Below are positions 19,201 to 59,470 of a stretch of 64,000 bases of DNA, in pieces. Below the pieces are notes generated by a model. The model was not told where the DNA came from, did not search any database, and saw only the letters and a list, made by a program, of their open reading frames with translations. The position numbers were made by a program, and so were the translations under genes. Within the stretch, counting starts at the first letter, position 1; each line of letters starts with the position of its first letter. The DNA comes from Penicillus capitatus (Eukaryota > Plantae > Chlorophyta): contig OZ287712.1 of NCBI GenBank assembly GCA_965649825.1, forward strand, positions 248,001 through 312,000, read 5' to 3'.

Positions 19201-19480
19201 CTTGTGCGTGTCATCGTTTGAAGGACAAGGAGACCTTTGGTGCTTCTGGAGAGCGTCGAAGGAGCACGGCTGCACATCAGACGATACTCATAACTTGTGA
19301 TGTGCATCCCCGCAGGTGTGCACAAGAACGTCCACACTATATGGATAATGAACTCTTCAATGACGCTGGCTTTCTCGTCTTCGAGCTTAAAACCGTCATG
19401 CTTATCATTGCCGACAGGGCAGCAAAGCAGGATCGTCTCTTGCATGATGAAATCGGATGTCGGTCACGCGATGAAGAAAT
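13278..19480. repeat. Repeat R, copy 2 (decayed gene remnants)
   Basis: 13278-14140 aligns to 44864-46375; 14140-18320 aligns to 48322-52430; 16692-19480 aligns to 1-2790. Confidence 0.9.
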
Positions 19481-19585
19481 ACGGATATCGCCCCCCGTCG
19501 GCCAGTCTGCCCAATGCCCCACTGTCACGTACAGCAAGCCCGCAGCCTATTTTGGCAGTAGTGATGCTGGAGACTATACTATCAA

Positions 19586-20086
19586 GTGCATGCCATAGGC
19601 CCTCGCAGCGAAACAGGGCCAGCCGATGCGGGCAGCGGGCCATTGACTATCGCAGCCGGACAGGGACTCTCAATTTTCATCGCGCAGCCCAGCGGCAGCG
19701 ATCCCAAAGTATCGGGCTATGTCAATGCCTCCACGGAGAAAGACTCTCAGACCACCTACTGGATGGAGATGATGAGGAAGGCCAACAATGGCCTCAGCAG
19801 TTTTGTCGACCTCAATCATGTGCGCCCCAATACTGCCGACCTGCTCCTGCTGAGCACCAGGCCCATACCCTAAGACCCTGGCGGTTTCGTTCGTCAGCTG
19901 TTTTTCAACATGGGGAGTGGTCGAATGGGCGATGCCCAGAACCAGCAGAGCACGGGGATGAGACTGATCAACCTGCCGCTTTCGCGAACGCTGGCCGCTG
20001 AGCAGCACCTGATCTGCGGATTCCACACGGCAGACGTGTATGTGCCCTACCACCATGAACTGATTCGCAACGTTAAAGCTGCGTAA
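19586..20086 (+). pseudogene. 3' part of a prokaryotic/phage-like gene of unknown function (in-frame TAA at 19871)
   Basis: One frame continues through the stop: ...TTYWMEMMRKANNGLSSFVDLN...*DPGGFVRQLFFNMG...YVPYHHELIRNVKAA*. No introns; begins near the end of host homology. Confidence 0.35.
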
Positions 20087-20098
20087 AAGAGTTTCTCG

Positions 20099-20527
20099 AT
20101 GGGGCACAAGGAAACGGAGAAATTGATAGCCAAGGCTATCGCCACGGCGCAAGCCCCTCTAATTGAGAAGATTCAGGCCCTTGAGCCCAAGCAGGCGGAG
20201 TTCGAGGAAAATCTGCGCAAGACTGGCCGGCGAGACCTCTCGGAAGCGATTACAAAATTGGAGTGCGACTTAAAGACAATCAGAGAGCGAGAACATGGTC
20301 AGGCGCCTGTAGAACAGCAGGCAGTGGAGTCCCCGTGCCCCGCTTTCCCGGATAAAGACCAGGTTGGCGAAAAGGTGGAGCTGTATTGCCAGAAGTATGC
20401 GGATAAGGGCGATTACGCGACTACTACGAATAAAGGCAAAATCAATTGGCAATCGGGCATTGCCGAATTGCCCTACAAGTGGGCCCGCGAGCACTGCGAG
20501 GGACAGCCTTCCGTGCGCCTGGCGTAA
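20099..20527 (+). CDS. Phage-like hypothetical protein (N-terminal coiled coil)
   Basis: Intact 142-aa ORF (LIAKAIATAQAPLIEKIQALE...GKINWQSGIAELPYKW), tightly packed with its neighbours in operon fashion. Confidence 0.55.
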   Translation: MGHKETEKLIAKAIATAQAPLIEKIQALEPKQAEFEENLRKTGRRDLSEAITKLECDLKTIREREHGQAPVEQQAVESPCPAFPDKDQVGEKVELYCQKYADKGDYATTTNKGKINWQSGIAELPYKWAREHCEGQPSVRLA

Positions 20528-20552
20528 TCCATTGTAAAAAAGGAGCATGAAT

Positions 20553-21004
20553 ATGAAACGAAAAGAGATCATTTACATCGACGATTTTGGTCGCTGCGGT
20601 TGTTATGTGTGGCCTTCCTGGCGATCCTGGCCGAAAGGCATCTGGAGCGGTCCCTGGAGCGCGAGGAATTCGCGCTTATCTATCACGAGGCTTTGCAGAA
20701 AGGCCACGTCTGGCACAACGGCCATCCCACGGACGGCAGCCGGGGGGACTGGTGCCGGTGCTATGTGGCCCACCCAGTGGTCCTGGGCAATCTTATCCCG
20801 GAGCGTGTGGGATTGTGTCTGCGTCTCAAAGTGGTAGAGCGTCGCCTCATGCCGAGGCGGGACTTTACGCTGATCTGCTACAACACGAAGTGGGGCCAAC
20901 ACTTCGCCCTGGGTAACTCGGAGGGCAGCGAAGTCGTCAATCCCGATCCGGAGTTGCCGCTTCCGCGTGTGGACAGCTACCGGGTTTTTAAACTGGCGAC
21001 ATAA
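20553..21004 (+). pseudogene. DUF261-like papain/C39-fold peptidase (putative endolysin), one frameshift near 20600
   Basis: SD AAGGAG 20540-20545, ATG 20553. Reconstructed MKRKEIIYIDDFGRCGC/LCVAFLAIL...IYHEALQKG...CYVAHP...GQHFALGNSEGSEVVNPDP...DSYRVFK. This matches my recollection of the spirochaete DUF261 pattern (GC..L, CY..P, HF, SxRVF). Confidence 0.6.
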
Positions 21005-21054
21005 ACAACAAAAAGACCGGGGTGAACAATGAACTTCTCAAGGAGGGGATTTTT

Positions 21055-21284
21055 ATGAAGAGCGGACGCAAATATAGCGTGATCGTGATGGTGAGCGTGC
21101 TCATCAGTCTGGGCATGGTGGCCGGCGTGATTGCCGCAATCAACGAGGCGAACTTGCCCTGGCTGGCCACTACTCTGCCCATCCTAACCAGCGTGTATCC
21201 CCCTACATGGAAGCCAATGCGGTGCAAAAGAATACGCAAGCCAAGGTTGCAAAACCCAAGGCCAAAGAGCCAGAGAGAGGTTGA
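21055..21284 (+). pseudogene. Holin-like two-TM protein, one frameshift near 21195
   Basis: SD AAGGAGG 21040-21046, ATG 21055. MKSGRKYSVIVMVSVLISLGMVAGVIAAINEANLPWLATTLPILTSV/(V)SPYMEANAVQKNTQAKVAKPKAKEPERG*: two hydrophobic helices and a basic tail. Confidence 0.55.
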
Positions 21285-21286
21285 GA

Positions 21287-21466
21287 ATGAAAAAGTTTGT
21301 TTTACTACTGGGGGCACTATTAATCCTGTATTCAGGGCGGGTTCTACTACTCACACTTAAATTTGTGGGAGTTCTTTCCTGAAGTTGGGGCTTTGTTCTA
21401 CTTCCTTCTGAGCTTGTGGGCACCATAGTAGCGATTGCTTTAATCTTTTGGGGTCTCTTAGGTTGA
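21287..21466 (+). pseudogene. Small hydrophobic membrane protein, frameshifted
   Basis: ATG 2 nt after the upstream stop. Fragments MKKFVLLLGALLILYSG / NLWEFFPEVGALFYFLL / LVGTIVAIALIFWGLLG* lie in shifting frames. Confidence 0.35.
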
Positions 21467-21486
21467 GCCGGGAAGGATTGGCGCTG

Positions 21487-21753
21487 ATGGTCTGGGTGAT
21501 TTTGAGCGCCGCCCTGGGAATAGCCGTGGGCGGTATCTGGCTAGGGCGCAAGTGGGGCTTGCAAACAGGACGGAAAAGGACAGAGCAAACCCTGTCTGAA
21601 CAACGGTCAAAATATAACAAAGTCCTGTTTGAAAATGAAATGATCAACGCAAGCAAAGATCGCGCGTTAAGGGAGATAGGCGATGCGGATACGGAGGAAG
21701 AAGCCGTGGTTGTTGTCTCCGGCGTTACTGACGACTGGAATTCTGGTCGCTAA
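21487..21753 (+). CDS. Inner-membrane-anchored coiled-coil protein (i-spanin-like)
   Basis: SD GAAGGA 21472-21477, ATG 21487. N-terminal TM (MVWVILSAALGIAVGGIWLG) followed by a helical segment. Confidence 0.5.
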   Translation: MVWVILSAALGIAVGGIWLGRKWGLQTGRKRTEQTLSEQRSKYNKVLFENEMINASKDRALREIGDADTEEEAVVVVSGVTDDWNSGR

Positions 21754-21845
21754 TTGACGGGGATACGCCAAACACTGGCGCGCCGCGTGCGCGCGAACGC
21801 GTATGCGAAGGCGGAGGAACTGTAAACAGCCAAAGCTAAGACTGA

Positions 21846-22178
21846 TTACATGGTGAGTCCAGTCACTTAAGTACCCTCGGCGCCTGCGGACCGCTGTCAT
21901 ATCAGGAAGCGGACAGCCTGTCCGGTCCGCGGGGCCGCAACCGTTGTCCTCTACCCGTCACTAATTGCGCTACGGGAATCCAGCAAGAAGCGTCTCTGCC
22001 GAGACCCCAGAGACTGCAAATTGCAAGCGTCGACGAGCTGAGAGAGGCGACCTTAAACAATGACATCACAGATCTTGTCAAGATTTATGTGCGTGATATA
22101 GCTGAGCTTACGGCTTACGCAAGGAAACTGGAGGCCTTGCTTAACGCGGCAGAAGGGCAACGGGAAAGGGAAAGATGA
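21846..22178 (+). pseudogene. o-spanin/lipoprotein-like ORF with damaged 5' end (not in ORF track)
   Basis: Open frame ...LPVTNCATGIQQEASLPRPQRLQIASVDEL...RDIAELTAYARKLEALLNAAEGQRERER*. Its TGA overlaps the next ATG (ATGA, 22175-22178). Confidence 0.4.
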
Positions 22179-22426
22179 CAGATAATCAGGAAATCATTAC
22201 GGAGCTGCGCGAAATATGCTTTGAGCTTAAGCACCTATCAGGACAGTGGGACAAGACTTTTGCGCACCTTGAGGAAGTTATTGGGCTGTGTCTCACCAAA
22301 CACGAAAAGCGCCCGGGGTCCCTGGAGAGCTTGACGAGATCAAACGAGCGCAAGCTGGTCTCGTTGGTCATGGCGATTGCCAATGCCGCAATGGTGGCGG
22401 CGGGCCTGCTGGTGAGGCTGCTCTAG
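22175..22426 (+). CDS. Coiled-coil plus C-terminal TM protein (XhlA/holin-like)
   Basis: 83 aa, with HEKRPGSLE then the TM segment LVSLVMAIANAAMVAAGLLVRLL; translationally coupled start. Confidence 0.5.
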   Translation: MTDNQEIITELREICFELKHLSGQWDKTFAHLEEVIGLCLTKHEKRPGSLESLTRSNERKLVSLVMAIANAAMVAAGLLVRLL

Positions 22427-22524
22427 TATGCTGTTAGTTACGGGAGAATATAAGATGATGATCAAGGTTTTTGAGTTTGGCAAGTAATGGCAACGATCAG
22501 AGCCGAAGCATTCCGCCAATTGTA

Positions 22525-22760
22525 CTGCGCTATCGTGTCTCTATCAGTACCGAGTCCTGCGCTATCGTGTCTACAATCAGTACCGAGTCCTGCGCTATCG
22601 TGTCTACAATCAGTACCGAGTCCTGCGCTATCGTGTCTACAATCAGTACCGAGTCCTGCGCTATCGTGTCTACAATCAGTACCGAGTCCTGCGCTATCGT
22701 GTCTACAATCAGTACCGAGTCCTGCGCTATCGTGTCTACAATCAGTACCGAGTCCTGCGC
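22525..22760. repeat. 33-bp tandem array, ~7 copies
   Basis: Unit ctgcgctatcgtgtctacaatcagtaccgagtc: six identical copies, one 32-bp variant and a 6-bp tail; no spacers. Confidence 0.95.
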
Positions 22761-22859
22761 GAACAGCCCAGTAGCCACAGTCAGGAAAACCAGGCTCACC
22801 CAAGACAGGTAGCCTTGCAATTGGTAACGCACGATCAGGTTTAACATCTTTTGGGTCAT
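22530..22859 (-). pseudogene. Bacterial-type secreted protein fragment with expanded (AQDSVLIVDTI)n repeat
   Basis: MTQKMLNL...YLSWVSLVFLTVATGLFA-QDS resembles a signal peptide with a cleavage site. The coding strand of the array is ambiguous. Confidence 0.3.
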
Positions 22860-23318
22860 GATAATCTCAATGCGCCGACCAACATTCCTCTCGATGCCTC
22901 TTCTCGAAATCACCTTATTACATTCTACGGCCGCATCATTCTGAAACAGTGTATTTCCTCATTCAGCACCTCAATGTGCCGCCTATTTTCCCCTAGGAGA
23001 AAAACGCCAGCTTCCCGTGTGGGCCTTCAGCTATGTTCAGTTATTCGTTTTGTTTTTCCATCTGAGACGGAGCCAGCTGCTCATCGGTCTTCGCTTGCGA
23101 TGGGCAGTAAGTCCTGTCGCGAAGTACGACAACTGCTGACGCGATTCTTTCCGACTCTGTTTTCCATGGCGTTGTCTCGCTACTCCGTTCAAACGAATAG
23201 TGCCGAGTCAGAAAGGTCTTTGCTGGAATGAGACCATGATTACCAAATAAACGAACACAGCTTGCCTTAGGTCTAGCTGTTTATTTTTGATTCCATTTGA
23301 CTTGCGTCTCTACTCAGG

Positions 23319-23567
23319 CTAGAGATAGGGAGTCAGATGGAAATTTTCTTTAACACTTATATCTTTTTCTATGCTGTTTTCGTGGTTTCTTTTTTCGAGC
23401 TTCCACCCTGGCCGGGGAAGCTTAAAATTAGAGGGGTTTTTCAGACCAATCACTGTCATAAGGATTGAAATTTCATTGCCTTCAACTCTGACGGAGTCAC
23501 GATTTGCACCAATATTCGCAACCACACTCCCCGTCTCTATCCGCGTCATCGCATCTCGTCCATCCAC
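23319..23567 (-). pseudogene. FkbM-family methyltransferase-like fragment (internally deleted)
   Basis: VVANIGAN resembles the D(I/V)GAN SAM-binding motif; VEGNEISIL and RPGWKLE resemble the DVEGxE and RP..LE motifs. Spacing between them is much shorter than in intact proteins. Confidence 0.35.
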
Positions 23568-23871
23568 AAAAAAACCAAACTTTAATATGAACCATATTTT
23601 GGGCTACATGCGATTAGGCTCAGTACTCATATCCAGAACAAGACGATTGTCGCGATCTAAATTGCCGATTTAAAAGTGTGCGCGTAACGATCACATCGCA
23701 TCGCAATACGCCGCCAGTCTTTCAATTTAGCAAAAATATCCTCAACTTTATGGTGCTTTTTATAACTCGTTTTACAATATCCTATTGGCTCCTTACGATT
23801 CCTGCGACAGGGAATACAACTCCCAATATTCTTATCTACAAGCATTTTTCTTACTCTTGAGCTATCGTAGC

Positions 23872-24119
23872 TGTCGCCTGGCGATGGGACTACTGCCTTG
23901 TTGTTGAGGGGTTCATGTGTTTAGGGGGCGTCTGCTGTCTAGTCATAAGGGCCAAGGGACCATTTCTTGTGGCTCTGACGGCTCACTAAGTCACCTGCCT
24001 AGGAAAGTCACGTCACCACGTGGGTACTTAATTAGGAAATCGGACCCTTCCAGACCTGCTCTGTAAAATAACGAAGTCTTCCGCTGTTAACTCGTTTGAG
24101 CGCGGCGCCTCCGCTGACA
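23872..24119. mobile_element. Solo-LTR-like insert A (248 bp)
   Basis: Starts TGTC, ends GACA; flanked by direct repeat GTAGC (23867-23871, 24120-24124). Excision restores ADRGY-DSSRVRKML in frame. Confidence 0.8.
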
Positions 24120-24202
24120 GTAGCCTCGATCCGCAATCAGTACTTGCGCCGCCGGCAACTTAGAAAGCAAAACGTTTGCACCTTTGAAATCGCTTCTCTG
24201 AC

Positions 24203-24601
24203 TGATACGCGCGAATATCGAATTGTTAAAACAGACAGACGTTTGTTTCCTGTCAGAATGACTAGAGCAGTCACATCGTGACTGCCTAGATTTCCGAGGG
24301 TTCTGTCTCCGAGATGGCACTTACTAAGGGTTAACGTCACCTCAGAGTCCTTTTCCTATGGCTCTGAGAGGCTGGTGACTCACTTGTCCTGTCACTATTA
24401 GCACATAAATCCGTAGACGTGGCCTTGTAGATACCTTGCTCTGTAACACAGTGAAGACTTCCCCTGACATTTCCAAAAGGATGATGATTGTTTTGATAAC
24501 CCCCTTTTATAGTATTTTTCTGCATGACGTTATGATGGCGTCATGCTTCATGTCACGTTGTGACCTTCTCCTTCAGTTCTTCTCCCCTCCTGACAGTGAC
24601 A
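24203..24601 (-). mobile_element. Solo-LTR-like insert B (399 bp)
   Basis: TG...CA termini; direct repeat CTGAC (24198-24202, 24602-24606). Excision restores SEGQ-RSDFKG in frame. TATAAAAG on the minus strand at 24504-24511. Confidence 0.8.
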
Positions 24602-26652
24602 CTGACCTTCGCTCAGATGCAGCCGAATCGGACGCACCCTGCACCATCGCTCAGAACATGCAATTTGCTATTCATACCTCCAAAGATATTGAACGGTACG
24701 CCCGATCAAGCGTGGCTAGTTGCCCCTTTTTCAGGCTTGATGCCATACGATGTGCCTTCAGATGAGTGGCGTCAATCATCAGCATATCCGCCTCTGCAGC
24801 ATTTGGTTTGACCAGTTCTTCGAAGATATTCTTGAAAACACCGTTCTTGACCAGCACACAAAACGATGTAAAGTGTTTTAAGGGGTCGTATTCAGGCGAT
24901 GCATCACACCAGCGTGAACCATTGCCAATAATGAAGATAATACCGCTGAGAACACGTCTGTCATCGACCCTGGGACGGCCGTGTGTCTTTGGGAAATGGG
25001 GTTTAAGACGCGATATCTGCTCATCGCTCAAACAAAATAGATTGCTCATGGGCAGGCTCTGTTTTAGAGATATTGAATCGCTTTACTTTCCTGAGGTCAA
25101 TGGTTTCTGAGCCTAACGCTGTACCAGCTGGAGACGGGGAGGAACGAAATAGCTATACTGCCACTGCTTATTGCGCATAGGTGGTGGTTGCAGCTTTGCT
25201 GTCAGCATATGGTCTGCCGGTTCGGGTGCTAATCTCCACCCGGACAGCCGTCCTTTTTAGTTTTTTTTTTAATCCTTCTTCGCCTTGCTGATTTGTAAGC
25301 GCCAGGGCTTCACTAGATCGCTTTGCCTTCTGTCGAAAAATAGCCGAAACAATTAAACACACTCAAATTGGTTTTTGTTCGATCATGCATGCACACACAG
25401 CCCTCCGATGAAAAACAGCGGTCAGTTCCACGATCTCAGTCATTGCTTAATAGCAAAGGTGAAGAACTGCTCCGACAACATCAGCAATGCACACCATCTG
25501 GCAATGGCCATCTGAGGTAAACAAGCATCTTCAACTGGCACTGAGGCAAAAGACCGTTCGTGCGATGTAGATAACTTGAACTCTGTAATGCTGCTGAGTC
25601 ACTCGTCTTCGAACAGAACACTGCCACGCTCGTCCTTGCCGACAAGGCAGCAAGAAAGTATGGTTCCTTTCATGATGAAATCGGATGTCAGTCATGTGAT
25701 AAATGAAGTGCTCGAGACGAATGATCTTCCCACATCTCAATCGCAGAATTCGGATTACTGAACGGACAACGACAACGATGTCAACAAAGAGTCGTCGTGC
25801 CAAGCTGATGAGACTGAGACGGAAGACGTCTGCATTGCCGTACGACGTTATCGTGGACTCCGTTCTCTGTCCTCGGAAGGGCATTGTCCCAGAGATTGTT
25901 CTGATCCTCATTAAATACTTGCAGCAGGTGATGCTATTCTCCCAGGATGGTAGGATTGTTTTGTTTGTGGCGACTGAACCACGCAACCCGAATGTGCATT
26001 TCGACATCGATCTGACAAATCGATCGCAGTCGAACGAGATACTTCGCATACGTCAAATCGAATGTCGATTACATCTGGATGATACACATCGTTTACTGTT
26101 GTGACAAATGGAACTTCTCATTTGTACGAAGAACACTGGTTCATGTAATCTGCGTAAAACTAGTAAATCTCGGAGCCATGCTTCAGAATAAAGGAGCTGC
26201 CGAAGTCCAGGTTTCTCAAAGAAGACGATGTCTTTTGCAGATTCATTCAAAGCCTCCGCTGTGACGACAGAGAGGCCATCTTCAAACTGATTGTGTATTA
26301 CTGGACGATAAATGACACATGCGATACAAAACACTGTTGTGGGCAAAAAGGAAGAGATTCATGATCCTTTTTATGTGTTTTTCAGTACGCGTCCTCATAA
26401 TCAGCGACACGTTTAAGTCTTAAAGAAGATATCCGGCCTTTCATCGATTCTGACTTAAGCCGGCACTTGTTAGTCAGCCAGGAGAGCAAAAAGAACAGCC
26501 CTCATGGGAAGAACCTTTGTCACTGTACCCAGACTGACTGATGCAGTAAACGATACACTAGACTTGCGTTTATTCAACTGAAAAAAGACAAACTCCTGAG
26601 ACATAGCAAACAGAAAAGGTGTCATACATCTAAGCCACTGATGTGAAGCGAT

Positions 26653-29600
26653 TCACACACTGAAAGAGGGGCCTGGATTGTTTGGCAGATTGGAAGGTTC
26701 GCCACTTCGTTTGTGGCACAAGCGTCCGACGCATTGCGTCACACGTGTAAAAAGAAAAGCCCTCAAGACTCGGAGGGTGCTCCAATCCTGGACACCTTCC
26801 ATGCCTTGGTCCTCAAGGACAGCCTTCAGATAGATTTCCGCAGATTTGGTGAAAGTGTAGGACAGAACAAGGAAGAACCCACAGATCGCCATGGATAGCA
26901 AAAGTGTGAGGAGAATTTTGACAGCATCAGAGGTGCGATTGTCATTGAAGAACAAACCAGAGGCAAAGGTCAGCTGAGACACAACCAAAGATGCGGTCTC
27001 GAAGCCGTTCAGAAAACCATAAGGCTCGTCGAATGGCTGATAGGTAACATGGACATAGATTGCGAATGTGAGAATGCAAACAGCCAGGATCCCTTGGATG
27101 TTGGTTCCCAAGGGATAGGAGAAGGCAACCACGACGGTCAATACAGCCTTTCTGAGCATCACTATAGATTCCCAGAAAACAAAACGCTCCTTGTATGCGC
27201 GGTACAGGAATCCGGTGGCATCAGAGAACCAGGGATTCTGACCGGGTTTCTGAGAGCGTTGTCTGATCAGGACGTAAGCCAAAAAGGCAGGTAGTCCAAA
27301 GGAGAAGATGACGAGGACGGGCCAACCCGCAGTTGCGGCGAGCAGAGCATGAGATCCTTCATAGCATTTCAGGGAAGTATCGAGTGCCCAGTATTTGTCA
27401 GTATGCTCATCTTCGAAGTTGACGGAGTCATGCACTCTGATGCAGTGAAGCGTGTTGACGGCTGTCTTGGTAATTGACACGTAGGTAAGGTAAGCAACGG
27501 CCAGGAAACTGAGTAGTGCTCTCTTCGCGAAGTACCAGGTGTTTTCGTGGTACTTTCGCGTCAAGAAGATCCAGAAAATGACGTAGAACAGAAATATGCC
27601 TGCAGGGATGAGAAGGTGGATGATGGAACGCATGACGGATCTGGGTGGATCGTTGTGTCGATCAAACAGGCAGTCTACAGAGAGCGCGATCCCTGCAGTA
27701 GCAGCTCCGCTCAGGAAGTCTGCAAGACACAAGAGAGTGTCGCCAAGAGATTCTTGAATTCAGAAGCCCCATAGCATACCTGCCGCGAACAGCAATGAAC
27801 GCATCCAATTGGTCCAGTTCAGATTGATGATTGCAGCTGCGGCGATCACCTGAAGGAAATTGATGCCGATCTATGATACAGAGCAAGTCTGATATTGGAA
27901 TGTGTCAAAAGGATTTGCCTTGAAGATTTCGACGACCGTTCGCTTCGCGACTGTCGGATCCGAGATTGATGCTCTTTTCCTCGATACGGAATCGGGCAGA
28001 TCTGGGCGAGCACCTTCTGACGTTATCTCTCCGGTGTGCGTCGTCTCTACCAGCTCGAAGTGACCTGGAATGTTGTTGGTCGAGATTCTTTTCTTCGAAG
28101 GAACAAGACGACGATTTCTTCGACTGACCCGATCGGTCCGATTTTGATTCACCACAGGCATCCGTGTGTTCAAGTTGCTTCTGATTGCGAAGCTGGAGAG
28201 AAGGAACAACACAAGGATGGAAGCCACAAGAAGCATCGCCGTCTCAGCGTCCCGGTGGCATTCGTCGCACTCAAAGGACCAAGAGCGTCCATAACCAACA
28301 TCACAGGCGCCACAGAGGAAACCAGTGTAACCCTAATAAGGTAGAATGATTGGCAATTTCATTGCTGAGAATAGCCACACTTTTTTACACTGAGCCTCGG
28401 AGTAGTCTCTGTCTAATGTCTCTTCGATCTCGCAAGTCTCTATTTCATTCGTCAAGTCGTTCAAAGCATCTTCTCGGCCACTGAAGTCACACGCCTCTCT
28501 CGAAACACATTGCTGGACGTGACGAGAACAGGGGGACCGATGCCAATAACCCTTGTTTGGGTGGATGACGTTCGTAGTACAGTTACCGTTCTCCGGACAG
28601 GGCAGGCACATAGATGCATCTGAGTCAAAGTTGTATTGTGATCCACTGCAGCGGACACAGAGTGTCAAGTTTTCTTGGGCGAACTCCCCAAGCTGACACT
28701 CTCTGACTTCGACTTCGACGGAGAGCGGCTCCAGACTGGGTTCGCTGAAGTTCATTCGGATCTCGTATCGGCCTGGACGCTGAAATCCAGAGATCGGCGG
28801 GAAGCTCTTCTGCTTCTCATTCACCTGCGTGTTGAACTCTCCAGAGAACAGACCGTCCGGAGAGTACATCGTTGCCTGGACAAATGCATCCCCTTCGCCG
28901 AGGGCCGGACTCTGTCCGTACCCGTCCACGATCTCGACAAGAAGCATCGGAAGAGAGTCTCCGCTTCGGTGATTCCCAGAAACGAGTTCGTTGTTCTCGA
29001 TAGGCCGTTCACTGTCGTCTTGACCATTGCCGATTGCAAATCCGCTGACGGATCTCGCATACGAGGCAATGACTGGACCATACAGATCAGCCTGGTTGGC
29101 CGTCCAGTCTGGGCACATATCCTTGGTCGATTTTAGCAGCTCCAGTGCTTCTAGAGCGTCTGTCTGGTACAACTCAGGAGGCGTTTCTGTGTCTTTAGAC
29201 CAGCAGGAGTAACGAAGGACGTTCGGATCCTGTGTGAAGATGGCACCTCCGGATGTCTTGGCTCGATTGTTTGAGAACGTGCTGCCGGTCACTGCCACAA
29301 AGGTGCAAGAAGCATTTGATCTCGTGCAGTCTTGTTGATGTCGCTGAGTGGAAACATGCACCGCACCTATGGCACAATCATAAGAGTTGTTCTGCTTTCA
29401 AACTATAAAGACACCTCCAAGATCGGCACTGTTGTCATTGAATGTGCAGTTGTTCAGCTGCAGTGACAGAGATTGGGGCTCGGAGGAACCAAAAGCGATC
29501 GCTCCTCCATGTCCTTTTGCGTCGTTGTCGCTAAAGACGCATCTGGAGCACAGGAAGGTGGATGACGCATTCGCCAAAACAGCCCCTCCGTTTTCCTTGG

Positions 29601-32600
29601 CCATGCAATCGGAGATCTTGAGTTCATCAGCTGTGAGACTTGATCCAGTGAGTAAAATGCTTCCGCCACTCATTGCTTTGGAGTTCGATAGCAAAGTGTT
29701 TAAGATTGTCAATGAACTGTTCAGTGTTGCTGCGATTGATCCCCCAGCGACGGTAGCCTTGTCGTCCGTGAAATTAGACCTTGTCAGTTGTAACCTGGAA
29801 GTCTTCATGACGATGGATCCTCCGATGGCGCCCTTGTTTCTTCGAAAAGTTGTTGCATCTGCATTCATCTCAGCGTCCTCGAGGTAAGCGGCGCCTCCGT
29901 CGCTAACTGCTTTGTTGTTCTCAATTGTACAGTCATTAAGAAACACTCGCGCCTGCGTTTTAATGTATAGGCAGCCTCCAGTATCGGCTTTGTTGTTTAG
30001 AAAGGAACAATTTGTCGCCCGGAAGATGCTCGATAATTCACTGTACAGGCACGCTCCTTTCCCTTCCACTTCATTGCTCACGATCGATCCACCAATGACA
30101 ATCATTTCCCCTTCATGGAGACGAACTGCACCGCCACCTATGAGTGCGCGATTGGACGATATCCTTGAATTCTCCAGAACAAGTTTGCTGTTCGTGTAAC
30201 AACTGATTCCTCCAGCAGCTGAAGTGACGGTGTTGGACTCAACGATGCATTTCGATAGGTGCGCAAGTGTCTTGCTTTGAACGGTCAGACCCCCACTGTC
30301 TGGGGCCGAATTGGATTGCAATACAGAATCGGATAGATTGAACAAGGTTCTGCTTGAGCAACTGATTCCTCCTCCTACGACAGCAGCATTGTTGCTGCGG
30401 ATGATCAGATCGCTGCCAGCCGCGTTGCACGTGGCCAAGAAGAAGCCGCCTCCTTCTACAGTGGCTTGGTTCGACAAAAACAAGGAGTTCAGGATCGTTG
30501 TCTCACTCTGCTCGCATGCAAAGCCACCTCCGTTTTCCGTATCAGCTCTGTTTTCTGTGAAGTTTACGCTGAAAAGTGAAGTGGAAACGCGAATGACATG
30601 CACTCCGCCACCCGAGCCAGCGGTATTCTGTGATACGAAGCAGTCCTTCAGGCTGATCGTCGCAACCAAAGCACCCACACCTCCTCCAAAGATTTCTGCA
30701 GTGTTCCCAACGAAACTATCATTATCCACATCTGCTCTTGCTTCTTCGACCATTAAGCCAGCACCTTCATTGGCCTCGTTTCCTGTATAGCTGCATCTGA
30801 CAGACTCGACGCTTGAGTTCTTGACGGAAACTCCTCCTCCTTTCACTTGAGCAGAGTTCGCTGACCATGTCACTTCTTCCAGACGAGCGTTGCTTTCCTC
30901 GCGGATCCCTGCTCCACCACCGTCGAGGGTAGCGCTGTTGCCAGCGAAGACGCATCGGCGAACGAGAAGATCGTCTGAGGCGCTGCAGTCAAGGCCTCCG
31001 CCTGTTCTGGCAGAATTGTTGTTCACTGTGCATCTGCTAAGTTGCATCTGAGTGGATGCGGAGAGGAAGATACCTCCTCCCTTGTCATTTGCTGCATTCT
31101 CTTCGAAGGTCGTGTCCACGATCTTGCTCTCCGAAACGCCATCGAAGTGAATAGCACCGCCGCTGTCAGCAGTGTTCTTCGACATCACGGATCCGCGGAC
31201 GACGAGATCCCTCGATGCAGATATCTGCAGACAGCCACCGTCTCTGGCCGTGCCGTTGCTGCAGTCCAGTGCAGATACCCTCGACGAGCTGCTCTTCGTC
31301 AGGAGGATGGACCCTCCTCTTCCCGATGCATTGTTGCTGCGGAAGATGGAGGAGATCAGCTCCAGTATTCCATTGGAGACATAGAGAGCGCCTGCGTCCG
31401 TTGTAGCCGCGTTGTCTTGGAAGGAGCAGCCGTCGATCGTCAGATTTCCGTCGAAAGAGGCGATGGCGGCTCCGTTCTCTGCGGCATTGGACGTGAAGCT
31501 GCAGTTGGAGACTGAGAGGTTCTTTGTTGAATTCGACAGGATGGCAGCTCCAGAGAACACGGCGGAGTTCTCGCGGAACGAACTGTCGACGACAGTGGCT
31601 GTCTGAACACGGTCCAGCAGGAGAGAGGACTCTGTGGAGGTTCTGATATCGGCATTCCTCATGTCCAGGCTGCCTTCTACAACGCGGAGAACGGCGAGTT
31701 CGTTTGAGCTGGCGGTCAGACCTTCCACCGATGACGAGGAACCCGGCGGAGACGACATCAACGATAATGACGAGTTCTCTCCGGACAGTCCTGTGTTCCT
31801 CCGGAGCCTCAGTCCTCTCAGATCGTTCTCCGGTGCCAGTCTGGCAAAGCACTGATCGCCGCAAGTGTTGTTCGAGAATACGACATCGATCATCTCAACG
31901 GAAGAGCACAACGAGCTGGAAGCAGAGAGGCCACTTGCTCCGTTAAGCGAATTGCGCCTGAACGCCACGTGATGCAGACTGATCTTCCCCAGAGGACCCT
32001 CCCGGAGGCAGCTGTCAACCTGGACGATGGATGCGCCTTCTGCGTCCAATGTACAGCCCCGAAAGACCATATTGGCGAGGAGCACATTCTGAGACCTGTA
32101 CAGTCATAACGGTCAGTCACTTTGCCTGGTTGGCAGTTGCTGTGGCTGGATCTACCTTATGTGAAAGACTCCATCTTCTGACGGACATCTGAATCGAATC
32201 TTCCGGTCTGCCTTCGGAAAGATGCCATCGATGGGATCGGTTGATGGGACGTTGGAGCTCAGAGTGAGATTCCACTGCACAACAATTCGAGCAGACACTC
32301 GTATCTCGTCTTCGACATTCAGTAGGATGACATCGTTCTCTCTTGTGCAGTTGATAATGACACCGAGGTCTTCCGCTACGCCTTCCAGTGCCCTCGAGTC
32401 AATCAGCCACGTCCTTGACTCCTCGTCTAGCAGATCTGATATCTCCTTTCGCGTCAGCTGACACTCCGTATCTAATCACACCATACACAGTTCACAGTTT
32501 CGGTGAGACTAATGCATCGGTTGTTGTATTACCTTCTCCAACGGCGCCACGGGATCTTCTTTGGGATAGACCACGAGTCGCCGGGCGTTCCTAAGAACAA

Positions 32601-32979
32601 ACCATCATCCCTTTCTCCGAATGCTAAAGGGAAGGTAGATACCTGAGCAGCTGCAGCAGAACCGGTCACCTCTTGCGTCCACTGTGAAAGTCGTTCGCGG
32701 CGAACCCCTGGCAAAACGCGAACGTAATCAATCGCTGTTCATCGAACGAAGGAGCGAGAATGCGATGCATCGTAATGCAAATAATGACGACAGTTTAAGT
32801 TGCCAGCCAAGCATTCTTCTGAGACGACGTTTGGCTGACTCACCTTCGGACTGAAGACGCTCCGCGAAAGAGACAAGGATTTCTTCTCGGGACTGAGCTG
32901 CGGCTAGAGCAAATGTCAGCAGCAGCGAGCAAAGGAACATCGCGGTAGGGCATCCATGCTTTCTCGCAGTGGAAGGCAT
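26653..32979 (-). CDS. Large beta-helix (Pmp-like) surface protein with multi-pass TM domain, copy 2
   Basis: Exon-for-exon paralogue of 3618-9937. Signal peptide MPSTARKHGCPTAMFLCSLLLTFALAAA; same GC-AG intron (27871-27918). Confidence 0.85.
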
Positions 32980-34807
32980 CTCCTTCCATCTGTCCCTGTG
33001 ACTGTCAGGTCTGCCGCTGTGCGTAGGGAAACAAGATCCGCCATGTGTGCCTTTTTGGGCTTTGCGTTCAACCGTGCTGACCAACATGCCTCTCTGGCTA
33101 AAAAATCTGAACAAGCGACTATGATAATGCGAATCGAAATCCAGCGTTTAAATATGCTCTTTAGATGAAGCTTCGGGTCGGTGGACGACGAACATGAATA
33201 GCAACGAAGTTGAGAATCAATGACCACTGTTATGACCGAGAACTTGCCAGCTGTGTTTGCGTTTGGCCAGCACTTGCATCCATTGTCAGGAGGTCGCCAT
33301 CTCCCCAAGGCTACGAAGACACCCGAACGAAATCTTAGACAGCGCGTGTCAGCAATTCTGAAACACTAACGTCGGCTTCTCGCGCTTTTTCCTTTCCTCA
33401 CATGACCAGGCATTATTCCGACCATGCCTGTGTTTTTGCGCTGGCCATGTTCATTCGCCTGTTGAACTTCAAATGGCAGTGTTGCATGGAAACTTGGTGA
33501 AAGAGCTCCTAAAGTTAGAGACAAACGACTTCTTCCATTTCTCGCCGAAATTGTTTAGTTGCCGTGCCGAGAATCATGTCTACGCGTCTAAACGTGTTGC
33601 CGGCCGAGTGACATAGGCAGAGAGAGCGGCGGATCGTGCTCACTGTGAAATGCGCAAGACGGTCATGACCTGAAAGGAGGCTCGGGCTGTGGACGACAGA
33701 GTTTACTGTACTACTTGCCCCCTCAGCGGTAAGGGAGTTACGCCGAGGAAGCGCTTCGAGCACTGTCGTCACCTGTTAGTTTGTTCGTCATTTTGTTCAC
33801 CATGACATCGGTTGACGTAACCGATGCAAAACCTTCTCAGTGATTCTCTTCTGTCTTCGTCGGATAAAAGTTATGAATAAAAAGGGTATGCATATCTGTG
33901 ATATCAGGACAGCGTTGTGCATTTGTATTAGTGCAACCTGCTGATCAGAGTACCGGTTTTCAAGTAAGGTCAGAAATAAAGCGCTTTGATCCCCGCGGTT
34001 CACTTGGCTGCATTAGGGACATGAAGATAGAGAAATAAACATACAGCAGAAAAACAGACACCATAGAATATGAACAATGAATACCTAAACCGCACCTTTC
34101 TCGAGTGCAGATTTTGGACATTATATTCGTAGTCATGACGATGTCTTTGACAGGCCAAATGGATGTCGCGCAGGAAGTTAGTTAATCATGCAAACATCCA
34201 TCCGATCCTGTTAAGAAGTCTTTGGTGTTCTCTCTTCTTTTTCTCATTGTGACATTGATGGTTTCCGTTGTCCAGTTAAGGATTCATGTCAGTCGACAGC
34301 GCCGCTGTTCGCATTGCTGCTGCGATAGATGTGATACGGCTTCAGAATGTGTAGCACAGCACTACAGGGTGAGGCAAGTGGCTGGACGGCTGCTTCGAGT
34401 CGCCGGCAAGAGGTGCTTGCTGTCGTTTTCCTCGCCAGAATAGACATGCAAAACGGTGTGAACGATGCAAAGACGTGGATTCTTCAAAAGCTGTTTTACA
34501 ACAGTTCGGACACAGACAAGAGAACTCGAAACGGTAGCAACTTGACGAATGGCTCCGCATGTCGTGTGCCACGTCATCCTTCGTGTGGTTCTTACGTGAT
34601 TTGCAACTCAGCAAACACGCAGCTGTTAGTCACCGACACGACAAGGCAGACAGCACTGCGAACTTCACAGCATGCATAACGCCATTCAGAAACCGTGACA
34701 TCATAGAACTGCGCGGGTATGTAAGCAGCGCGAAAGTACTCTTCGCACAAAGAGTTCATTCTGTGAAACAAACGGCGAAGTCGATTCGTAAGCACTGTCC
34801 CTTCGTC

Positions 34808-40084: not shown

Positions 40085-40193
40085 ATCCGATGCGCCCGTC
40101 GATTGGATCGCCGGCGGCAGGAATTCTTTTGAAAAGAGACCGACGTTCTTTCGATTTTTGTAACGAGAATTTGTGTTTCGTGTGATGTGGTTA

Positions 40194-56502: not shown

Positions 56503-59470
56503 TCAAGGCGCTTTGTATGTCTCTGTGTGAAGCACGAGTGGATGGATGGCTCCTCGGAAACTGAACGATATTTGTTCTAGCATGTCCCATCCTGGCCATG
56601 CGCCGTTGCTAAGGACGGTTGGCGCATCGTTTATAAAATCTTTTGCCTTGCCGCCGGCGAAAAGTGGACAATTGCTCCTATTTAGAATAATCCCATTTGC
56701 TGAATCAAAATGGACGTGCTTTCACGCTTGCTTGATAAGTTGTTAACGTGACCCTTAATGCCATGTAATGCTTCGAAAGATTCTCGGCAAAGGAACGCAT
56801 GCAGCCCTGGAGCGCGCTCGTCGTTTAGTGACCCTTCCTCGCTTCCAGTTCAGCTCGACTTGAGAAATTCGCTATGCATGCGGAAGCCAGTTCGATGACT
56901 CGGAGGAGGGCAAAGACGATAAGTAACAATAGGCGACCGTATACGGTCTGGCGTTTAGGTGCTGATGCAGCATGGTCGGTACCAAAATGACCTTCGACGC
57001 ATTGTCTACCTACCGTCTCTATCCTGGTTTTATTGCAATAGGCGCAGCGTTTGAGTCTTTCGCTAACTCGTCACCATGTCTTGCTCTTCATCCCATCTCC
57101 GTATCTAGTACAGTTCGATGAGTCTGTCCCGAAATCGTATTTATATGACATTCATGTTTAAAGGTAGACATATCCATACCCGGAATGCATTAGAGCATTT
57201 CTTCGGGTGGGCATTCACCACTAATGGAGAAAGCTGTCCATGACCGTCCTATCAACGTCGACTCAATTTGTATTGCTGATGGGACAAGTAGCGCAAGGCC
57301 TTTTCGTCGAAGCAGCAATAGTTGCGCGCAAGGCTAGGCTTCGGCATAGCGGACTTCACCATCCCTTGCTCGAATAGATGAAGATAGAAAACAAACAGCG
57401 CCTTACTGACAAGAGGGTGCTTATCAAACATATCGTCCGATCCCATACCTGTCACCGGCGCCGCGCTCAGACGAACTACACAGCGGAAGGCTTTGTTGTG
57501 TTTACAGAGCAGGTAAAGAATGGTTTAGACTGTCACTTATGTACTCGCATGGTGACGTGACTTCCCTAGGCAGATGACTAATCCTGCTGCCGGAACCACA
57601 GACAAAGGTCTTAGACGCACTTTAACCTCGTCTGACAAGACATTCAACGCCCCCTGAGCAAATGATCCCCTTCGCAACAAGACAGTCACATCGACAAAGG
57701 AAAATCTTGGCGACAATACCGTCCACAAGGCGAGCGCATTTGGTGCGTATCTCCGGAAACGTTGTTCTGAAGAATTACTTACGTCGAGGTAGAATGCCAC
57801 AAACACAGAGATGGATTACAAACGAGACAGAATTTGATACAGGGGTGCGGATAAGTATCTAGGTGTTGATGTGACCCAGAAGGGGACAGCTGTCCAGATG
57901 GTACGACGGCGAAGCTACAACTGTCCCCTACGACAACTTACGATCAAAATCATCTTGAAAAAATGAACATTAAAAACGGACGCGCATGATGACAGATTTG
58001 TAACTGCGTTCTGTACGTTTCTGCATACGAACAGCAAACCGCAAACGCGCATTGCTTCAACTTTCCGAACGAATCTCACAGCACCGTCGAATGTGGAACA
58101 TCACGGTGTGAGAAACAACAGTCGCTATGACTGACGCCCATATCAACGCAACTCGAAGAAGAAACATTGGACCGACGCGGAAAACGGGCACTCGAACAAT
58201 CGATCTTTTGAAGACAGACAATCATCCGCACAAAAAATGGAGATCTTATAGCGTCGGTCTCTAATTGCCTCATGTCGCCCATTTCACACGGAGACTTGTC
58301 TACATCAAACGACCGATGAGCGAATCCAACGCCGATTCTCGTCCGCTTTCATGAATCGGACTTAATCTTCGCAGTTGCGATCAACTCCTTCCTGGTGCGG
58401 TTTCGAAGATTGGACTCTTTTAGAAACGACAGCCTTGATCCGGTCTTCCGAAGTCTTCTTTGTTCGTTTGTTCGCTTTTAGTCACTTCGCATTCGAACGA
58501 CGCAGAAGCATCTGGAAGCTACACTGATTCCTGTCGATCTCCGCGTGACGTAACCACGTCCTTCCGATGTCAGTTGTTTACGTACGTAGTATCGAACTGC
58601 GAGTGGTCGTTGCGGAGACTTTTGCGCGACGGCTGTCATCTTTTTACGTTCCCAGGCATTTCTTATCAGAATGAACTGACACTAGCAAAGCTGCTGTCGC
58701 CTTCGACGGAATGTATAAAGCCACATAAACAGCGTAGACAACCCAAACCAAAAAAGTGTTAACTTACTACTTGCCAGTGAACAAGGCATCTTGCCCTTAC
58801 AATCGATTTTCTGCGACGCCATATTGTATGTCGTTAGCACAGATGACAACGTTCCCGAACTGCCCGAACTTCGATCGACGTCAGGACGCAGATTTCGTAG
58901 GAGGGATGACGTTCGTCCATACGCGGCACATTCGATATGGGTCACGATTTTGATCCTTTGTCAAACAGAGCATTTCTTTCGCCTCTCTCCATCGCGTTCT
59001 TCCTACCTCCCACTGAAATCGCCATCCAACACAGCGGCAATCGTCATCCAACCTCGACGACAGAACAGATGTCTTCTGGATCATCATCCAAGAGTTGCAT
59101 CTGAACATCCCCTCACTGTAACCGCGACGGGCGATGAAGTCGCGTACCCGTACGGCGCATCACGTGCGTTCGACTCTGTTCAAGTGAATACGCGATTCGC
59201 CAGAGAATGCAGAAGCGCGTGATGCGTCCTGCGACGTTCCTACACGTACGTCATTCTGGCGGCCAATCTCGGCACGACCATGCAGACGAATCGTCGTCAA
59301 ATGTATACCGCCTCGGACGCGTTGCCGTTCTCTCTGACTGAAGCACAGGCGAGGTATTGTCTCGCTGTTGACGTGCCGCTAACCGACGTCATATCTCGTC
59401 TTCATTGCCGAATGGAAATCGTCTCGACTGTTTTGCTTTAGTCTCGCCGGTGTTTCCCTCGCTAGAATTT

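What the first reader, a model, noticed from the sequence alone, without database searches (positions are those of the whole stretch)
23617..25113. Bacterial IS5 element hit twice by LTR-type inserts: in-sequence evidence that bacterial DNA lives in an algal nucleus
Seen: both IS ends are present. Two unrelated inserts (248 and 399 bp) each have TG...CA ends, no long inverted repeats and perfect 5-bp TSDs (GTAGC, CTGAC). Removing them restores the transposase frame at both sites and gives an 840-bp element. Known: TG...CA with 4-6 bp TSDs marks eukaryotic LTR retrotransposons and solo LTRs, and short two-ORF elements with a TA target are typical of IS427-group IS5. Inference: host retroelements inserted into this DNA after transfer, which argues for genuine HGT over contamination and sets an order of events (IS arrival, two LTR insertions, solo-LTR formation).
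Basis: partly seen in the sequence, partly recalled or inferred. Interest (0 to 1): 0.9.

Follow-up and report, generated by a model that had tools for sequence, protein, structure and literature searches.

The report
Dead bacterial IS pierced by algal LTRs
A decayed 840-bp bacterial jumping gene (IS5 family, IS427 group) sits in the nuclear DNA of a green-lineage alga and was later hit twice by the alga's own retrotransposon LTRs, which shows real bacterium-to-alga DNA transfer rather than contamination, though similar rare cases are already published.

Summary
Window 23617-25113 is an IS5-family, IS427-group insertion sequence. Its ends match those of Paracoccus ISPaes2, TA flanks both sides, and its transposase is 53-64% identical to alphaproteobacterial ones. 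It is split by a 248-bp and a 399-bp insert, each with TG...CA ends and a perfect 5-bp duplication. Removing them gives 840 bp.

The LTR reading is now supported by outside evidence. A profile built only from copies in another algal record finds insert 1 (E=1e-31), a third copy at 57450-57715 (E=3e-29) and the core of insert 2 (E=2e-9). That record is mislabelled in public databases as a bacterial MAG. In it the same sequence occurs as paired 98.8%-identical LTRs around a gag-like ORF, with a 5-bp duplication.

- The two inserts are related, not unrelated.
- The transposase stays broken after insert removal (at least six frame-breaking indels and a stop).
- No bacterial gene flanks the IS.

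The host carries a genuine PsbP gene and eukaryotic genes. A metagenome contig of the same sample is identical across the IS at the same 17x depth label as its neighbour contig.

This is a new example of a rare but published kind (IS5 in a rotifer, IS607 in protists). Interest is moderate.

The parts
23615..23616 (.). TA flanking the IS (putative 2-bp target duplication, copy 1)
   Evidence: ISPaes2 and the metagenomic IS in L001 are flanked by TA in the same way (PMC3832669). It cannot be proven to be a duplication because no empty site is available.
23617..23871 (-). IS segment 1: the right inverted repeat and the C-terminal part of the transposase (aligns to residues 170-250 of bacterial P0001). 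Contains a TAG stop.
23872..24119 (+). Insert 1: a 248-bp solo LTR, TGTCGCC...GCTGACA, with the 5-bp duplication GTAGC at 23867-23871 and 24120-24124.
   Evidence: It is 77-81% identical to the L067 paired LTRs and the L086 solo LTR, and the profile built from outside copies gives E=1e-31.
24120..24202 (-). IS segment 2, between the inserts: 83 bp including one duplicated copy of GTAGC. It aligns to residues 144-171 of P0001 and includes the DRGYD region.
24203..24601 (+). Insert 2: a 399-bp LTR-type insert, TGATACG...AGTGACA, with the 5-bp duplication CTGAC at 24198-24202 and 24602-24606. Its core, 24278-24469, is homologous to the same LTR family.
   Evidence: Profile from outside copies E=2e-9. 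nhmmer against insert 1 E=3e-5.
24602..25113 (-). IS segment 3: the N-terminal part of the transposase (DUF4096; residues 1-145 of P0001, with several frameshifts) and the left inverted repeat GGCTCAGAAACCATTGA.
25114..25115 (.). TA flanking the IS (copy 2)
57450..57715 (-). Third member of the LTR family: a 266-bp solo LTR. On its own strand it reads TGTCGCC...GGTGACA. The 5-bp duplication is ATACC on the + strand, at 57445-49 and 57716-20.
   Evidence: Profile from outside copies E=3e-29.
19349..25703 (.). A roughly 6.2-kb stretch that is absent from the paralogous unit 1 and carries the IS. It is bounded by 127-nt direct repeats at 19349-19475 and 25577-25703 (76% identical). The origin of the non-IS part is unknown.
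   Evidence: The non-IS part has no Pfam, PHROG, plasmid or phage match.

Best explanation
An IS427-group, IS5-family insertion sequence of alphaproteobacterial type became part of a nuclear chromosome of a green-lineage alga. It lies in a region rich in segmental duplications. It is now a fossil: single copy in the sequence available, with a transposase broken by at least six indels and a stop codon.

While it sat in the algal chromosome, two LTR retrotransposons of related host families integrated into it, 83 bp apart and in the same orientation. Each integration was made by a retroviral-type integrase, which leaves TG...CA ends and a 5-bp target duplication. Each element was later reduced to a solo LTR by recombination between its two LTRs.

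What is shown:
- the identity of the IS, its ends and its decay;
- the exact insert boundaries and duplications;
- the homology of the inserts to real paired LTRs in a related algal record;
- the eukaryotic context.

What is inferred:
- the route of entry, either the IS transposing by itself out of transient bacterial DNA or arriving as a passenger on a larger fragment;
- the reduction to solo LTRs;
- the timing of decay relative to the LTR hits.

The element has no present function.
For: IS identity:
- Pfam and NCBIfam assign the pieces to IS5-family transposases.
- Of 1640 homologues, every named one among the best 120 is bacterial. Identity is 53-64%.
- The best hit, P0001, sits in a bacterial gene context.
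- DNA identity to that IS is 70% from end to end.
- The inverted repeats and TA flanks match ISPaes2 (PMC3832669).

Inserts:
- The boundaries are fixed by alignment to the bacterial protein.
- A third copy with a 5-bp duplication lies 32 kb away, in a part of the window with no similarity to bacterial sequence.
- L067 holds a complete small element: LTRs of 247 and 245 bp at 98.8% identity, termini TGTCGCC...GCGACA, duplication AGATG, a TGG primer-binding-like site, a purine-rich tract, and an internal ORF with a CX2CX4HX4C knuckle.
- L086 holds a solo LTR with duplication GACTG.
- A profile built from those outside copies alone recovers all three window elements.
- A related alga has a complete gypsy-type element with identical LTRs and a 5-bp duplication.

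Host and contiguity:
- The window encodes Rrp8 and a PsbP exon with E=1e-27 to photosystem II OEE2 structures.
- Its PMP-repeat genes have relatives at 72-77% identity on contigs of a related alga (L058, L059), and weaker relatives (24-29%) in named green algae.
- Algal homology resumes 211 bp from the IS end, at 25325.
- The metaMDBG contig ctg335351_17x is 100% identical to window 14672-35049, including the IS and both inserts. Its neighbour contig carries the same 17x label.
- E. coli genomes have no match, so a cloning artefact is excluded.
Against: - No empty site was found in a paralogue or a relative, so the TA duplication and the route of entry remain untested.
- No autonomous element with reverse transcriptase and integrase carrying these particular LTRs was found. 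The L067 element has a gag-like ORF only, and its zinc-knuckle match is below threshold (E=0.048).
- Insert 2 matches the family only over its central 190 bp or so.
- The records that supply the LTR evidence are labelled as bacterial MAGs. My claim that they are eukaryotic rests on four 8-kb loci and one 6-kb locus.
- The two assemblies that agree probably derive from the same reads, so they are not independent.
- The IS-bearing contigs are labelled 17x, whereas a 702-kb contig of the same sample with 91-97% similar sequence is labelled 37x. The IS may therefore be in one haplotype or one strain only.
- The host species was not identified.
Confidence: 0.85

Rival explanations
1. The IS is bacterial contamination or a chimeric join in a metagenome-derived assembly. 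It is not part of the algal chromosome.
For: The sequence comes from a mixed sample: ENA metagenome assembly ERZ25074695 holds identical contigs. Alphaproteobacteria with such ISs commonly live alongside algae. The depth label is half that of another contig of the sample.
Against: - Only 840 bp is bacterial.
- Both sides continue into blocks that are repeated elsewhere in the window and in related algal contigs.
- The IS is decayed, with six indels and a stop.
- It carries two inserts of an LTR family that is otherwise seen only in eukaryote-like loci.
- An identical 20-kb stretch occurs in a 52-kb contig with the same depth label as its neighbour.
Confidence: 0.03
2. The two inserts are bacterial mobile elements, for example IS3-, Mu- or Tn7-like miniature derivatives that also have TG...CA ends and 5-bp duplications. 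On this view they entered the IS in the donor bacterium before transfer.
For: TG...CA ends with 3-5-bp duplications also occur in bacterial IS3-family and Mu-like elements (general knowledge). The family motif does hit records labelled Putridiphycobacter and Botrimarina MAGs.
Against: - Those loci have GC of 47-54%, fragmented ORFs, and Kelch+TYW2_N, JmjC, zf-CCCH and EF-hand domains. One of them also matches the LTR of the algal gypsy element. Wybutosine synthesis genes are not bacterial (general knowledge).
- In L067 the sequence forms paired direct repeats around a gag-like ORF, not inverted repeats.
- The inserts have no terminal inverted repeats.
- The specific 24-mer is absent from 185,579 prokaryotic species genomes.
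- No listed plasmid match covers the inserts.
- A third copy lies in algal sequence far from the IS.
Confidence: 0.04
3. The element is not a recent bacterial import. It belongs to a eukaryote-resident lineage of IS5-related transposons (PIF/Harbinger, ISL2EU or an unrecognised algal IS5-like family).
For: IS5 is the prokaryotic relative of PIF/Harbinger (PMC3673617).
Against: - Amino-acid identity of 53-64% and nucleotide identity of 70% to bacterial elements is far above the level seen between superfamilies.
- The inverted repeats are nearly those of ISPaes2.
- The element is 840 bp with one transposase gene and no second Myb-like ORF.
- P0001 lies among bacterial genes.
- No other copy is present in the window or in the algal loci fetched.
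Confidence: 0.05
4. This rival concerns the route of entry only. The IS did not transpose into algal DNA by itself. It arrived as a passenger on a larger foreign fragment, namely the roughly 6.2-kb unit-specific stretch 19349-25703, which integrated by end-joining or recombination.
For: - The IS lies in a stretch that the paralogous unit lacks, and that stretch is bounded by 127-nt direct repeats.
- The stretch has a run of same-strand small ORFs with no known domain.
Against: - Nothing else in the stretch resembles bacterial, plasmid or phage sequence.
- On the right side, homology to a related alga resumes only 211 bp from the IS.
- TA flanks both ends, as expected after transposition.
Confidence: 0.45

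Closest known systems
ISPaes2 of Paracoccus aestuarii plasmid pAES7 (IS5 family, IS427 group)
   Same: About 55% transposase identity. Near-identical terminal repeats: GGCTCCAGACCCATTGA in ISPaes2 against GGCTCAGAAACCATTGA here. TA on both flanks and a similar size (PMC3832669).
   Different: ISPaes2 is functional and sits in a bacterial plasmid. The window copy is in a eukaryotic chromosome, is frameshifted and stopped, and is interrupted twice.
Single-copy IS5-like transposon of the bdelloid rotifer Adineta vaga (Gladyshev and Arkhipova 2009, as cited in PMC3673617)
   Same: A single-copy, silent IS5-family element of prokaryotic type in a eukaryotic nuclear genome.
   Different: The host is an animal and the IS5 subgroup may differ. 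I did not read that paper. The window copy is heavily decayed and carries nested host LTRs, which give internal proof of residence.
IS607-like sequences in 14 eukaryotes, including Ectocarpus (PMC3673617)
   Same: Rare transfer of an IS from prokaryote to eukaryote, with the same concern about contamination, which that study addressed through eukaryotic flanks.
   Different: The IS family and transposase chemistry differ (serine recombinase against DDE). Some IS607 copies amplified in their hosts. Here there is only one dead copy.
Solo LTRs and small non-autonomous LTR retrotransposons (TRIM/LARD-like) of eukaryotes
   Same: TG...CA termini, 5-bp duplications, LTRs of 245-400 bp, and a paired-LTR relative with a primer-binding-like site, a polypurine-like tract and a gag-like ORF.
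   Different: No autonomous partner for this family was seen. Insert 2 shares only the core of the LTR.

Membership tests
IS5 family, IS427 group | DDE transposase of the DUF4096 + DDE_Tnp_1 type | tested here: met
   Pfam DUF4096 E=9e-11 and DDE_Tnp_1 E=1.5e-10. NCBIfam transpos_IS5_3 scores 66.5 and 93.9 bits on the two pieces. Each piece is below the whole-protein cut-off of 110, because the gene is split.
IS5 family, IS427 group | Short element (about 0.8-1 kb) with terminal inverted repeats like those of group members | tested here: met
   840 bp after insert removal. The ends align with ISPaes2 and with the L001 IS.
IS5 family, IS427 group | TA target duplication | tested here: inconclusive
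   TA is present on both flanks, as for ISPaes2 (PMC3832669). No empty site is available, and a 2-bp match has a chance probability of about 1/16.
IS5 family, IS427 group | Intact transposase (an active element) | tested here: not met
   Six indels that are not multiples of 3 and one TAG stop relative to L001 and L005, in addition to the two inserts.
Solo LTR of an LTR retrotransposon | TG...CA termini and a 4-6-bp target duplication | tested here: met
   Insert 1 GTAGC, insert 2 CTGAC, third copy ATACC. All three have TG...CA ends.
Solo LTR of an LTR retrotransposon | Homology to direct repeats that flank an internal retroelement region in a genome of the host lineage | tested here: met
   The L067 element has 98.8%-identical LTRs, duplication AGATG, and an internal ORF with a CCHC-type knuckle. 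Insert 1 is 77-78% identical to those LTRs. For insert 2 this is met only over its core (E=2e-9).
Solo LTR of an LTR retrotransposon | An autonomous partner encoding reverse transcriptase and integrase with the same LTRs | not testable with these tools
   No reverse transcriptase in the window. The whole host assembly could not be searched. A gypsy-type element of a different LTR family exists in a related alga.
Solo LTR of an LTR retrotransposon | Absence from true bacterial genomes | tested here: met
   The specific 24-mer has 0 hits in 185,579 species genomes. The extended hits of the looser motif fall only in loci with eukaryotic features inside records labelled as MAGs. The remaining hits are chance.
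PIF/Harbinger or ISL2EU (eukaryotic relatives of IS5) | Element of several kb, usually with a second Myb-like ORF, and only superfamily-level similarity to bacterial IS5 | tested here: not met
   840 bp, one gene, and 53-64% identity to bacterial transposases.

The most novel reading that the evidence does not exclude
The IS transposed by its own transposase directly into algal nuclear chromatin, making the TA duplication there. The source would have been DNA delivered transiently by an associated alphaproteobacterium; at DNA level the plasmid hits are mostly Paracoccus and other marine alphaproteobacterial genera. The silenced foreign DNA then became a preferred landing pad for host LTR elements: two of the three LTRs seen in 64 kb fall inside these 840 bp.
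Probability: 0.2. Interest if true: 0.7.

Novelty: new member of a known kind. Interest (0 to 1): 0.45.

Why it matters
Transfers of bacterial insertion sequences into eukaryotic nuclei are rarely documented. [quoted passage not shown] Such claims are always open to the charge of contamination. Here the sequence carries its own proof of residence: two integrations by host retroelements inside the IS, together with heavy decay. This adds an algal case from the IS427 group and gives a clean way of arguing from nested insertions.

The case also shows a practical trap. The obvious control, asking whether the inserts occur in bacterial genomes, returns hits, because algal chromosomes are filed as bacterial MAGs in a reference genome set.

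The element is a dead single copy with no sign of function, so its biological consequence is small.

Tried and rejected
1. Exact look-up of the 901-aa ORF returned nothing, because the gene call on record starts at a different codon. It was reached later through P0125.
2. The specific LTR 24-mer gave 0 hits in JGI metagenomes and in prokaryotic genomes. The looser motif gave 49 metagenome hits and 1 viral hit, none of which extends beyond the motif, so they are chance.
3. I looked for an orthologous or paralogous empty site for the IS. Unit 1 of the window lacks the whole 6.2-kb stretch, and the relatives L058 and L059 lose homology at 25325, so there is no empty site.
4. I looked for reverse transcriptase or integrase in the window with the L059 gypsy proteins and found none.
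5. Pfam, PHROGs, plasmid and phage searches of the non-IS part of the stretch (19460-23616) found nothing.
6. Rfam found nothing in the window.
7. I asked whether TGTAA, conserved in all the LTRs, also marks the 3' ends of the window's ORFs as a green-algal poly(A) signal. It is not enriched, so I dropped the idea.
8. For host identity, the best named relatives of Rrp8 are land plants and Astrephomene, at only 34-42%. This points to the green lineage but does not resolve the species.
9. A cloning artefact from E. coli was rejected, because E. coli genomes have no match.
Full report
**What is at 23617-25113**

The sequence shows an element bounded by GGCTCAG.../...CTGAGCC, with TA outside both ends. 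Two blocks interrupt it.
- Block 1 is 23872-24119, 248 bp, TGTCGCC...GCTGACA. GTAGC lies immediately before it and again immediately after it.
- Block 2 is 24203-24601, 399 bp, TGATACG...AGTGACA, flanked in the same way by CTGAC.

Removing each block with one copy of its duplication leaves 840 bp.

**The 840 bp is a bacterial-type IS**
- The minus strand encodes the two halves of a DDE transposase. Pfam finds DUF4096 and DDE_Tnp_1, and NCBIfam finds transpos_IS5_3.
- A conceptual fusion of the pieces finds 1640 homologues. The best 120 are 250-264-aa proteins at 50-64% identity, and every one that carries a name is bacterial. Most are Alphaproteobacteria such as Caulobacteraceae, Hyphomicrobiales, Sphingomonadales and Rhodobacterales.
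- The best hit, P0001 at 64%, lies on a metagenome contig between IMPDH, rhodanese and SLAC1 genes, which is a bacterial context.
- At DNA level the insert-free element aligns with that IS from end to end at 70% identity.
- Among plasmids, the named relative is ISPaes2 of Paracoccus aestuarii at 55%. Its ends, TA|GGCTCCAGACCCATTGA...GAGTCTGGAGCC|TA, are almost the same as the window's TA|GGCTCAGAAACCATTGA...GAGTACTGAGCC|TA. ISPaes2 is described as a functional IS427-group, IS5-family element bordered by TA direct repeats (PMC3832669).
- E. coli genomes contain nothing similar, so this is not the known artefact of a cloning-host IS jumping into a library clone (the artefact is discussed in PMC3673617).

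**The IS is a fossil**

Against L001 and L005 the coding region shows three separate 1-bp deletions, a 2-bp deletion at the A-run, a 10-bp insertion and a 2-bp insertion. It also has TAG where the bacteria have a tyrosine codon. The 125-aa 'OrfA' stays open only by chance across three compensating deletions. Because of this decay, the 'two-ORF' appearance cannot be told apart from a programmed frameshift. The closest relative has a single ORF.

**The insert boundaries are independently fixed**

tblastn of P0001 against the uncut window gives pieces covering residues 1-117, 100-134, 136-145, 144-171 and 170-250. The last three end exactly at the insert edges. Their 2-residue overlaps correspond to the duplicated 5 bp. 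Neither insert has terminal inverted repeats beyond 4-7 nt.

**What the inserts are**

Inside the window there is a third element at 57450-57715 on the minus strand. It is 266 bp and reads TGTCGCC...GGTGACA on its own strand, with a perfect 5-bp duplication (ATACC on the + strand). It aligns with insert 1 at 71% in BLAST and 80% in a global alignment. Insert 2 shares a core with both: nhmmer gives E=3e-5 against insert 1, and the motif TGCTCTGTAA-N7/8-AAGNCTTCC occurs three times in the window against 0 expected. The two inserts are therefore related, contrary to the finding.

The decisive evidence came from the scan of prokaryotic reference genomes with that motif. Most of the 29 hits are chance. 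Five loci extend to most of the element: L067, L086 and L088 in OZ245997.1, titled 'MAG: Putridiphycobacter sp., chromosome 1' (6.93 Mb), and L068 and L087 in CBDHGO010000004.1, titled 'MAG: Botrimarina sp.'.

These loci are not bacterial in character.
- Their GC content is 47-54% and their reading frames are fragmented.
- Pfam finds Kelch plus a TYW2 N-terminal domain, JmjC/Cupin_8, zf-CCCH and EF-hand. The first three fit a eukaryotic wybutosine-synthesis gene, a pathway that bacteria lack (general knowledge).
- L088 also matches the LTR of the gypsy-type element of a related alga.

I conclude that these are algal sequences filed under bacterial names.

In L067, read on the reverse strand, the sequence occurs twice as direct repeats of 247 and 245 bp at 98.8% identity, TGTCGCCAAGAT...CCGGCGACA.
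- The whole 1.8-kb unit is flanked by AGATG on both sides.
- Two bases after the first repeat comes TGGTTTCGGAGCG, which looks like a primer-binding site.
- A purine-rich run, GGCGGGAAGCGTGG, precedes the second repeat.
- The interior is one 385-aa coiled-coil ORF ending in CYSCRCKGHLAEDC, a CX2CX4HX4C knuckle. Pfam zf-CCHC scores only E=0.048, below threshold.

That is the anatomy of a small, gag-only LTR retrotransposon. L086 holds a 265-bp solo copy flanked by GACTG. A profile built from the L067 and L086 copies alone finds exactly three places in the window: insert 1 (E=1e-31), the copy at 57450-57715 (E=3e-29) and the core of insert 2, 24278-24469 (E=2e-9).

Separately, the related alga of sample ERZ26696514 carries a full element with protease, RVT_1 and rve domains. 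Its 157-bp LTRs are identical to each other (TGTTG...CTACA) and it has the 5-bp duplication CTTGC. Integrase-mediated insertion with exactly these hallmarks is therefore active in this lineage.

Insert 1 is a solo LTR. Insert 2 is best read as a solo LTR of a diverged sister family, with longer U3-side and U5-side ends. No autonomous partner with these LTRs was seen, and the window has no reverse transcriptase.

**The host and the surroundings**
- The window encodes an Rrp8 methyltransferase exon. It also encodes a PsbP exon that matches photosystem II OEE2 chains of green algae and plants at E=1e-27.
- It has two copies of a PMP-repeat gene. Relatives at 72-77% identity lie on megabase-scale metagenome contigs with eukaryotic features, and weaker relatives are in Cymbomonas, Bryopsis and Tetradesmus.
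- The best named relatives of Rrp8 are land plants and the volvocine alga Astrephomene, at only 34-42%.
- 'Green-lineage alga' is therefore supported, but the species is not identified.

The window is built from repeated blocks. Unit 1 is A (3-2782), B (2912-10184), C and D. Unit 2 repeats these, but with about 6.2 kb between A and B and about 9.8 kb between C and D.

The IS lies in the 6.2-kb extra stretch. That stretch is bounded by 127-nt direct repeats at 19349-19475 and 25577-25703, which are 76% identical, while unit 1 has a single copy of this repeat. Apart from the IS, the stretch has no match in Pfam, PHROGs, plasmids or phages. On the right side, homology to the related alga resumes at 25325, which is 211 bp from the IS. 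Only the IS itself can therefore be called bacterial.

Whether the IS jumped in by itself or came with part of this stretch is open. I give passenger arrival about 0.45. Most of the rest goes to transposition by the IS itself. The more specific chain in the novel reading, with a named kind of donor and LTR targeting as well, gets 0.2.

**Assembly support**

ENA metagenome assembly ERZ25074695 holds contig ctg335351_17x (52 kb). Its fetched 20.4 kb is 100% identical to window 14672-35049, including the IS and both inserts. Contig ctg277496_17x is identical to window 1-11088. The reads are probably the same as those behind the window, so this is not an independent replicate. A 702-kb contig of the same sample is labelled 37x and matches the window only over 39004-44605, at 91-97%. 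The IS-bearing arrangement may therefore be heterozygous, or may belong to a less abundant strain.

**Comparison with what is known**

[quoted passage not shown] The same paper cites a single-copy, silent IS5-like element in the rotifer Adineta vaga as the other likely case (PMC3673617). The present element is another example of that rare kind, in an alga and from the IS427 group. What it adds is internal proof of residence through nested host LTRs. It is not a new kind of system and has no visible function.

**Unexplained**

Two of the three LTRs found in 64 kb lie inside one 840-bp element, 83 bp apart and in the same orientation. If three insertions fell at random, two or more in this target would have a probability of about 5e-4 (my estimate). 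Possible reasons are targeting to silenced or lower-GC DNA (the IS is 45.5% GC against 52.4% for the window), or simply survival where insertions do no harm. I could not test either.

**Verdict**

Novelty is 'new member of a known kind'. Interest is 0.45.

Noticed in passing
L067, L086, L088 (OZ245997.1) and L068, L087 (CBDHGO010000004.1): Records in the prokaryotic reference genome set, titled as Putridiphycobacter sp. (a 6.93-Mb 'chromosome 1') and Botrimarina sp. MAGs, contain eukaryote-like sequence. The features are GC of 47-54%, fragmented ORFs, Kelch+TYW2_N, JmjC, zf-CCCH and EF-hand domains, and LTR retroelements. They are probably algal chromosomes mislabelled or wrongly binned as bacteria.
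   Followed up: partly
window 3-2782 / 16694-19459 / 50734-52427; 2912-10184 / 25972-33224; 13278-16516 / 44864-50656: The window is a mosaic of large segmental duplications at 77-90% identity. They form two units, each ordered A-B-C-D, and each unit carries a PMP-repeat gene of about 900 aa and a 359-aa multi-pass membrane ORF.
   Followed up: partly
window 39004-44605: A 5.6-kb segment with the Rrp8 ORF and a PsbP exon is 91-97% identical to part of a 702-kb, 37x contig of the same sample (L007), where bromodomain ORFs lie just upstream of Rrp8. Synteny breaks sharply at both ends, and also against L008. It looks like a duplicated copy inserted between blocks C and D.
   Followed up: partly
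L059:528-5355: A complete Ty3/gypsy-type retrotransposon in the related alga, with gag-protease, RVT_1 and rve domains. Its 157-bp LTRs are 100% identical and it has the 5-bp duplication CTTGC, so it inserted very recently.
   Followed up: yes
window 22510-22806: A near-perfect tandem array of a 33-bp unit, about 8 copies, inside the IS-bearing stretch.
   Followed up: no
window 35099-35546: A tandem array with a 60-bp period, 92-98% identical between copies. In one frame it encodes a repeated proline/alanine/serine-rich peptide (ASPSPDPPAS...).
   Followed up: no
window 19349-19475 and 25577-25703: 127-nt direct repeats, 76% identical, bracket the 6.2-kb stretch that holds the IS. The paralogous unit (2662-2918) and the related alga (L059 16216-16366) each have one copy. 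This is consistent either with insertion accompanied by a long duplication or with loss by recombination in the paralogue.
   Followed up: partly
window 23872-24601: Two of the three LTRs seen in 64 kb lie within the 840-bp IS, 83 bp apart and in the same orientation. This may reflect an integration preference for silenced or lower-GC foreign DNA, or survival only in dispensable DNA.
   Followed up: no
window 20099-22426 (+ strand): A run of closely spaced small ORFs on the same strand (142, 131, 101 and 83 aa; coiled-coil, and one with a C-terminal hydrophobic tail) lies next to the IS. They were called as genes in the metagenome contig but have no Pfam or PHROG match, and their origin is unknown.
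   Followed up: partly
ERZ25074695 contigs ctg335351_17x and ctg277496_17x against ctg340425_37x: The IS-bearing region carries half the depth label of a large contig from the same sample that has 91-97% similar sequence. This suggests a haplotype-specific or strain-specific arrangement.
   Followed up: no
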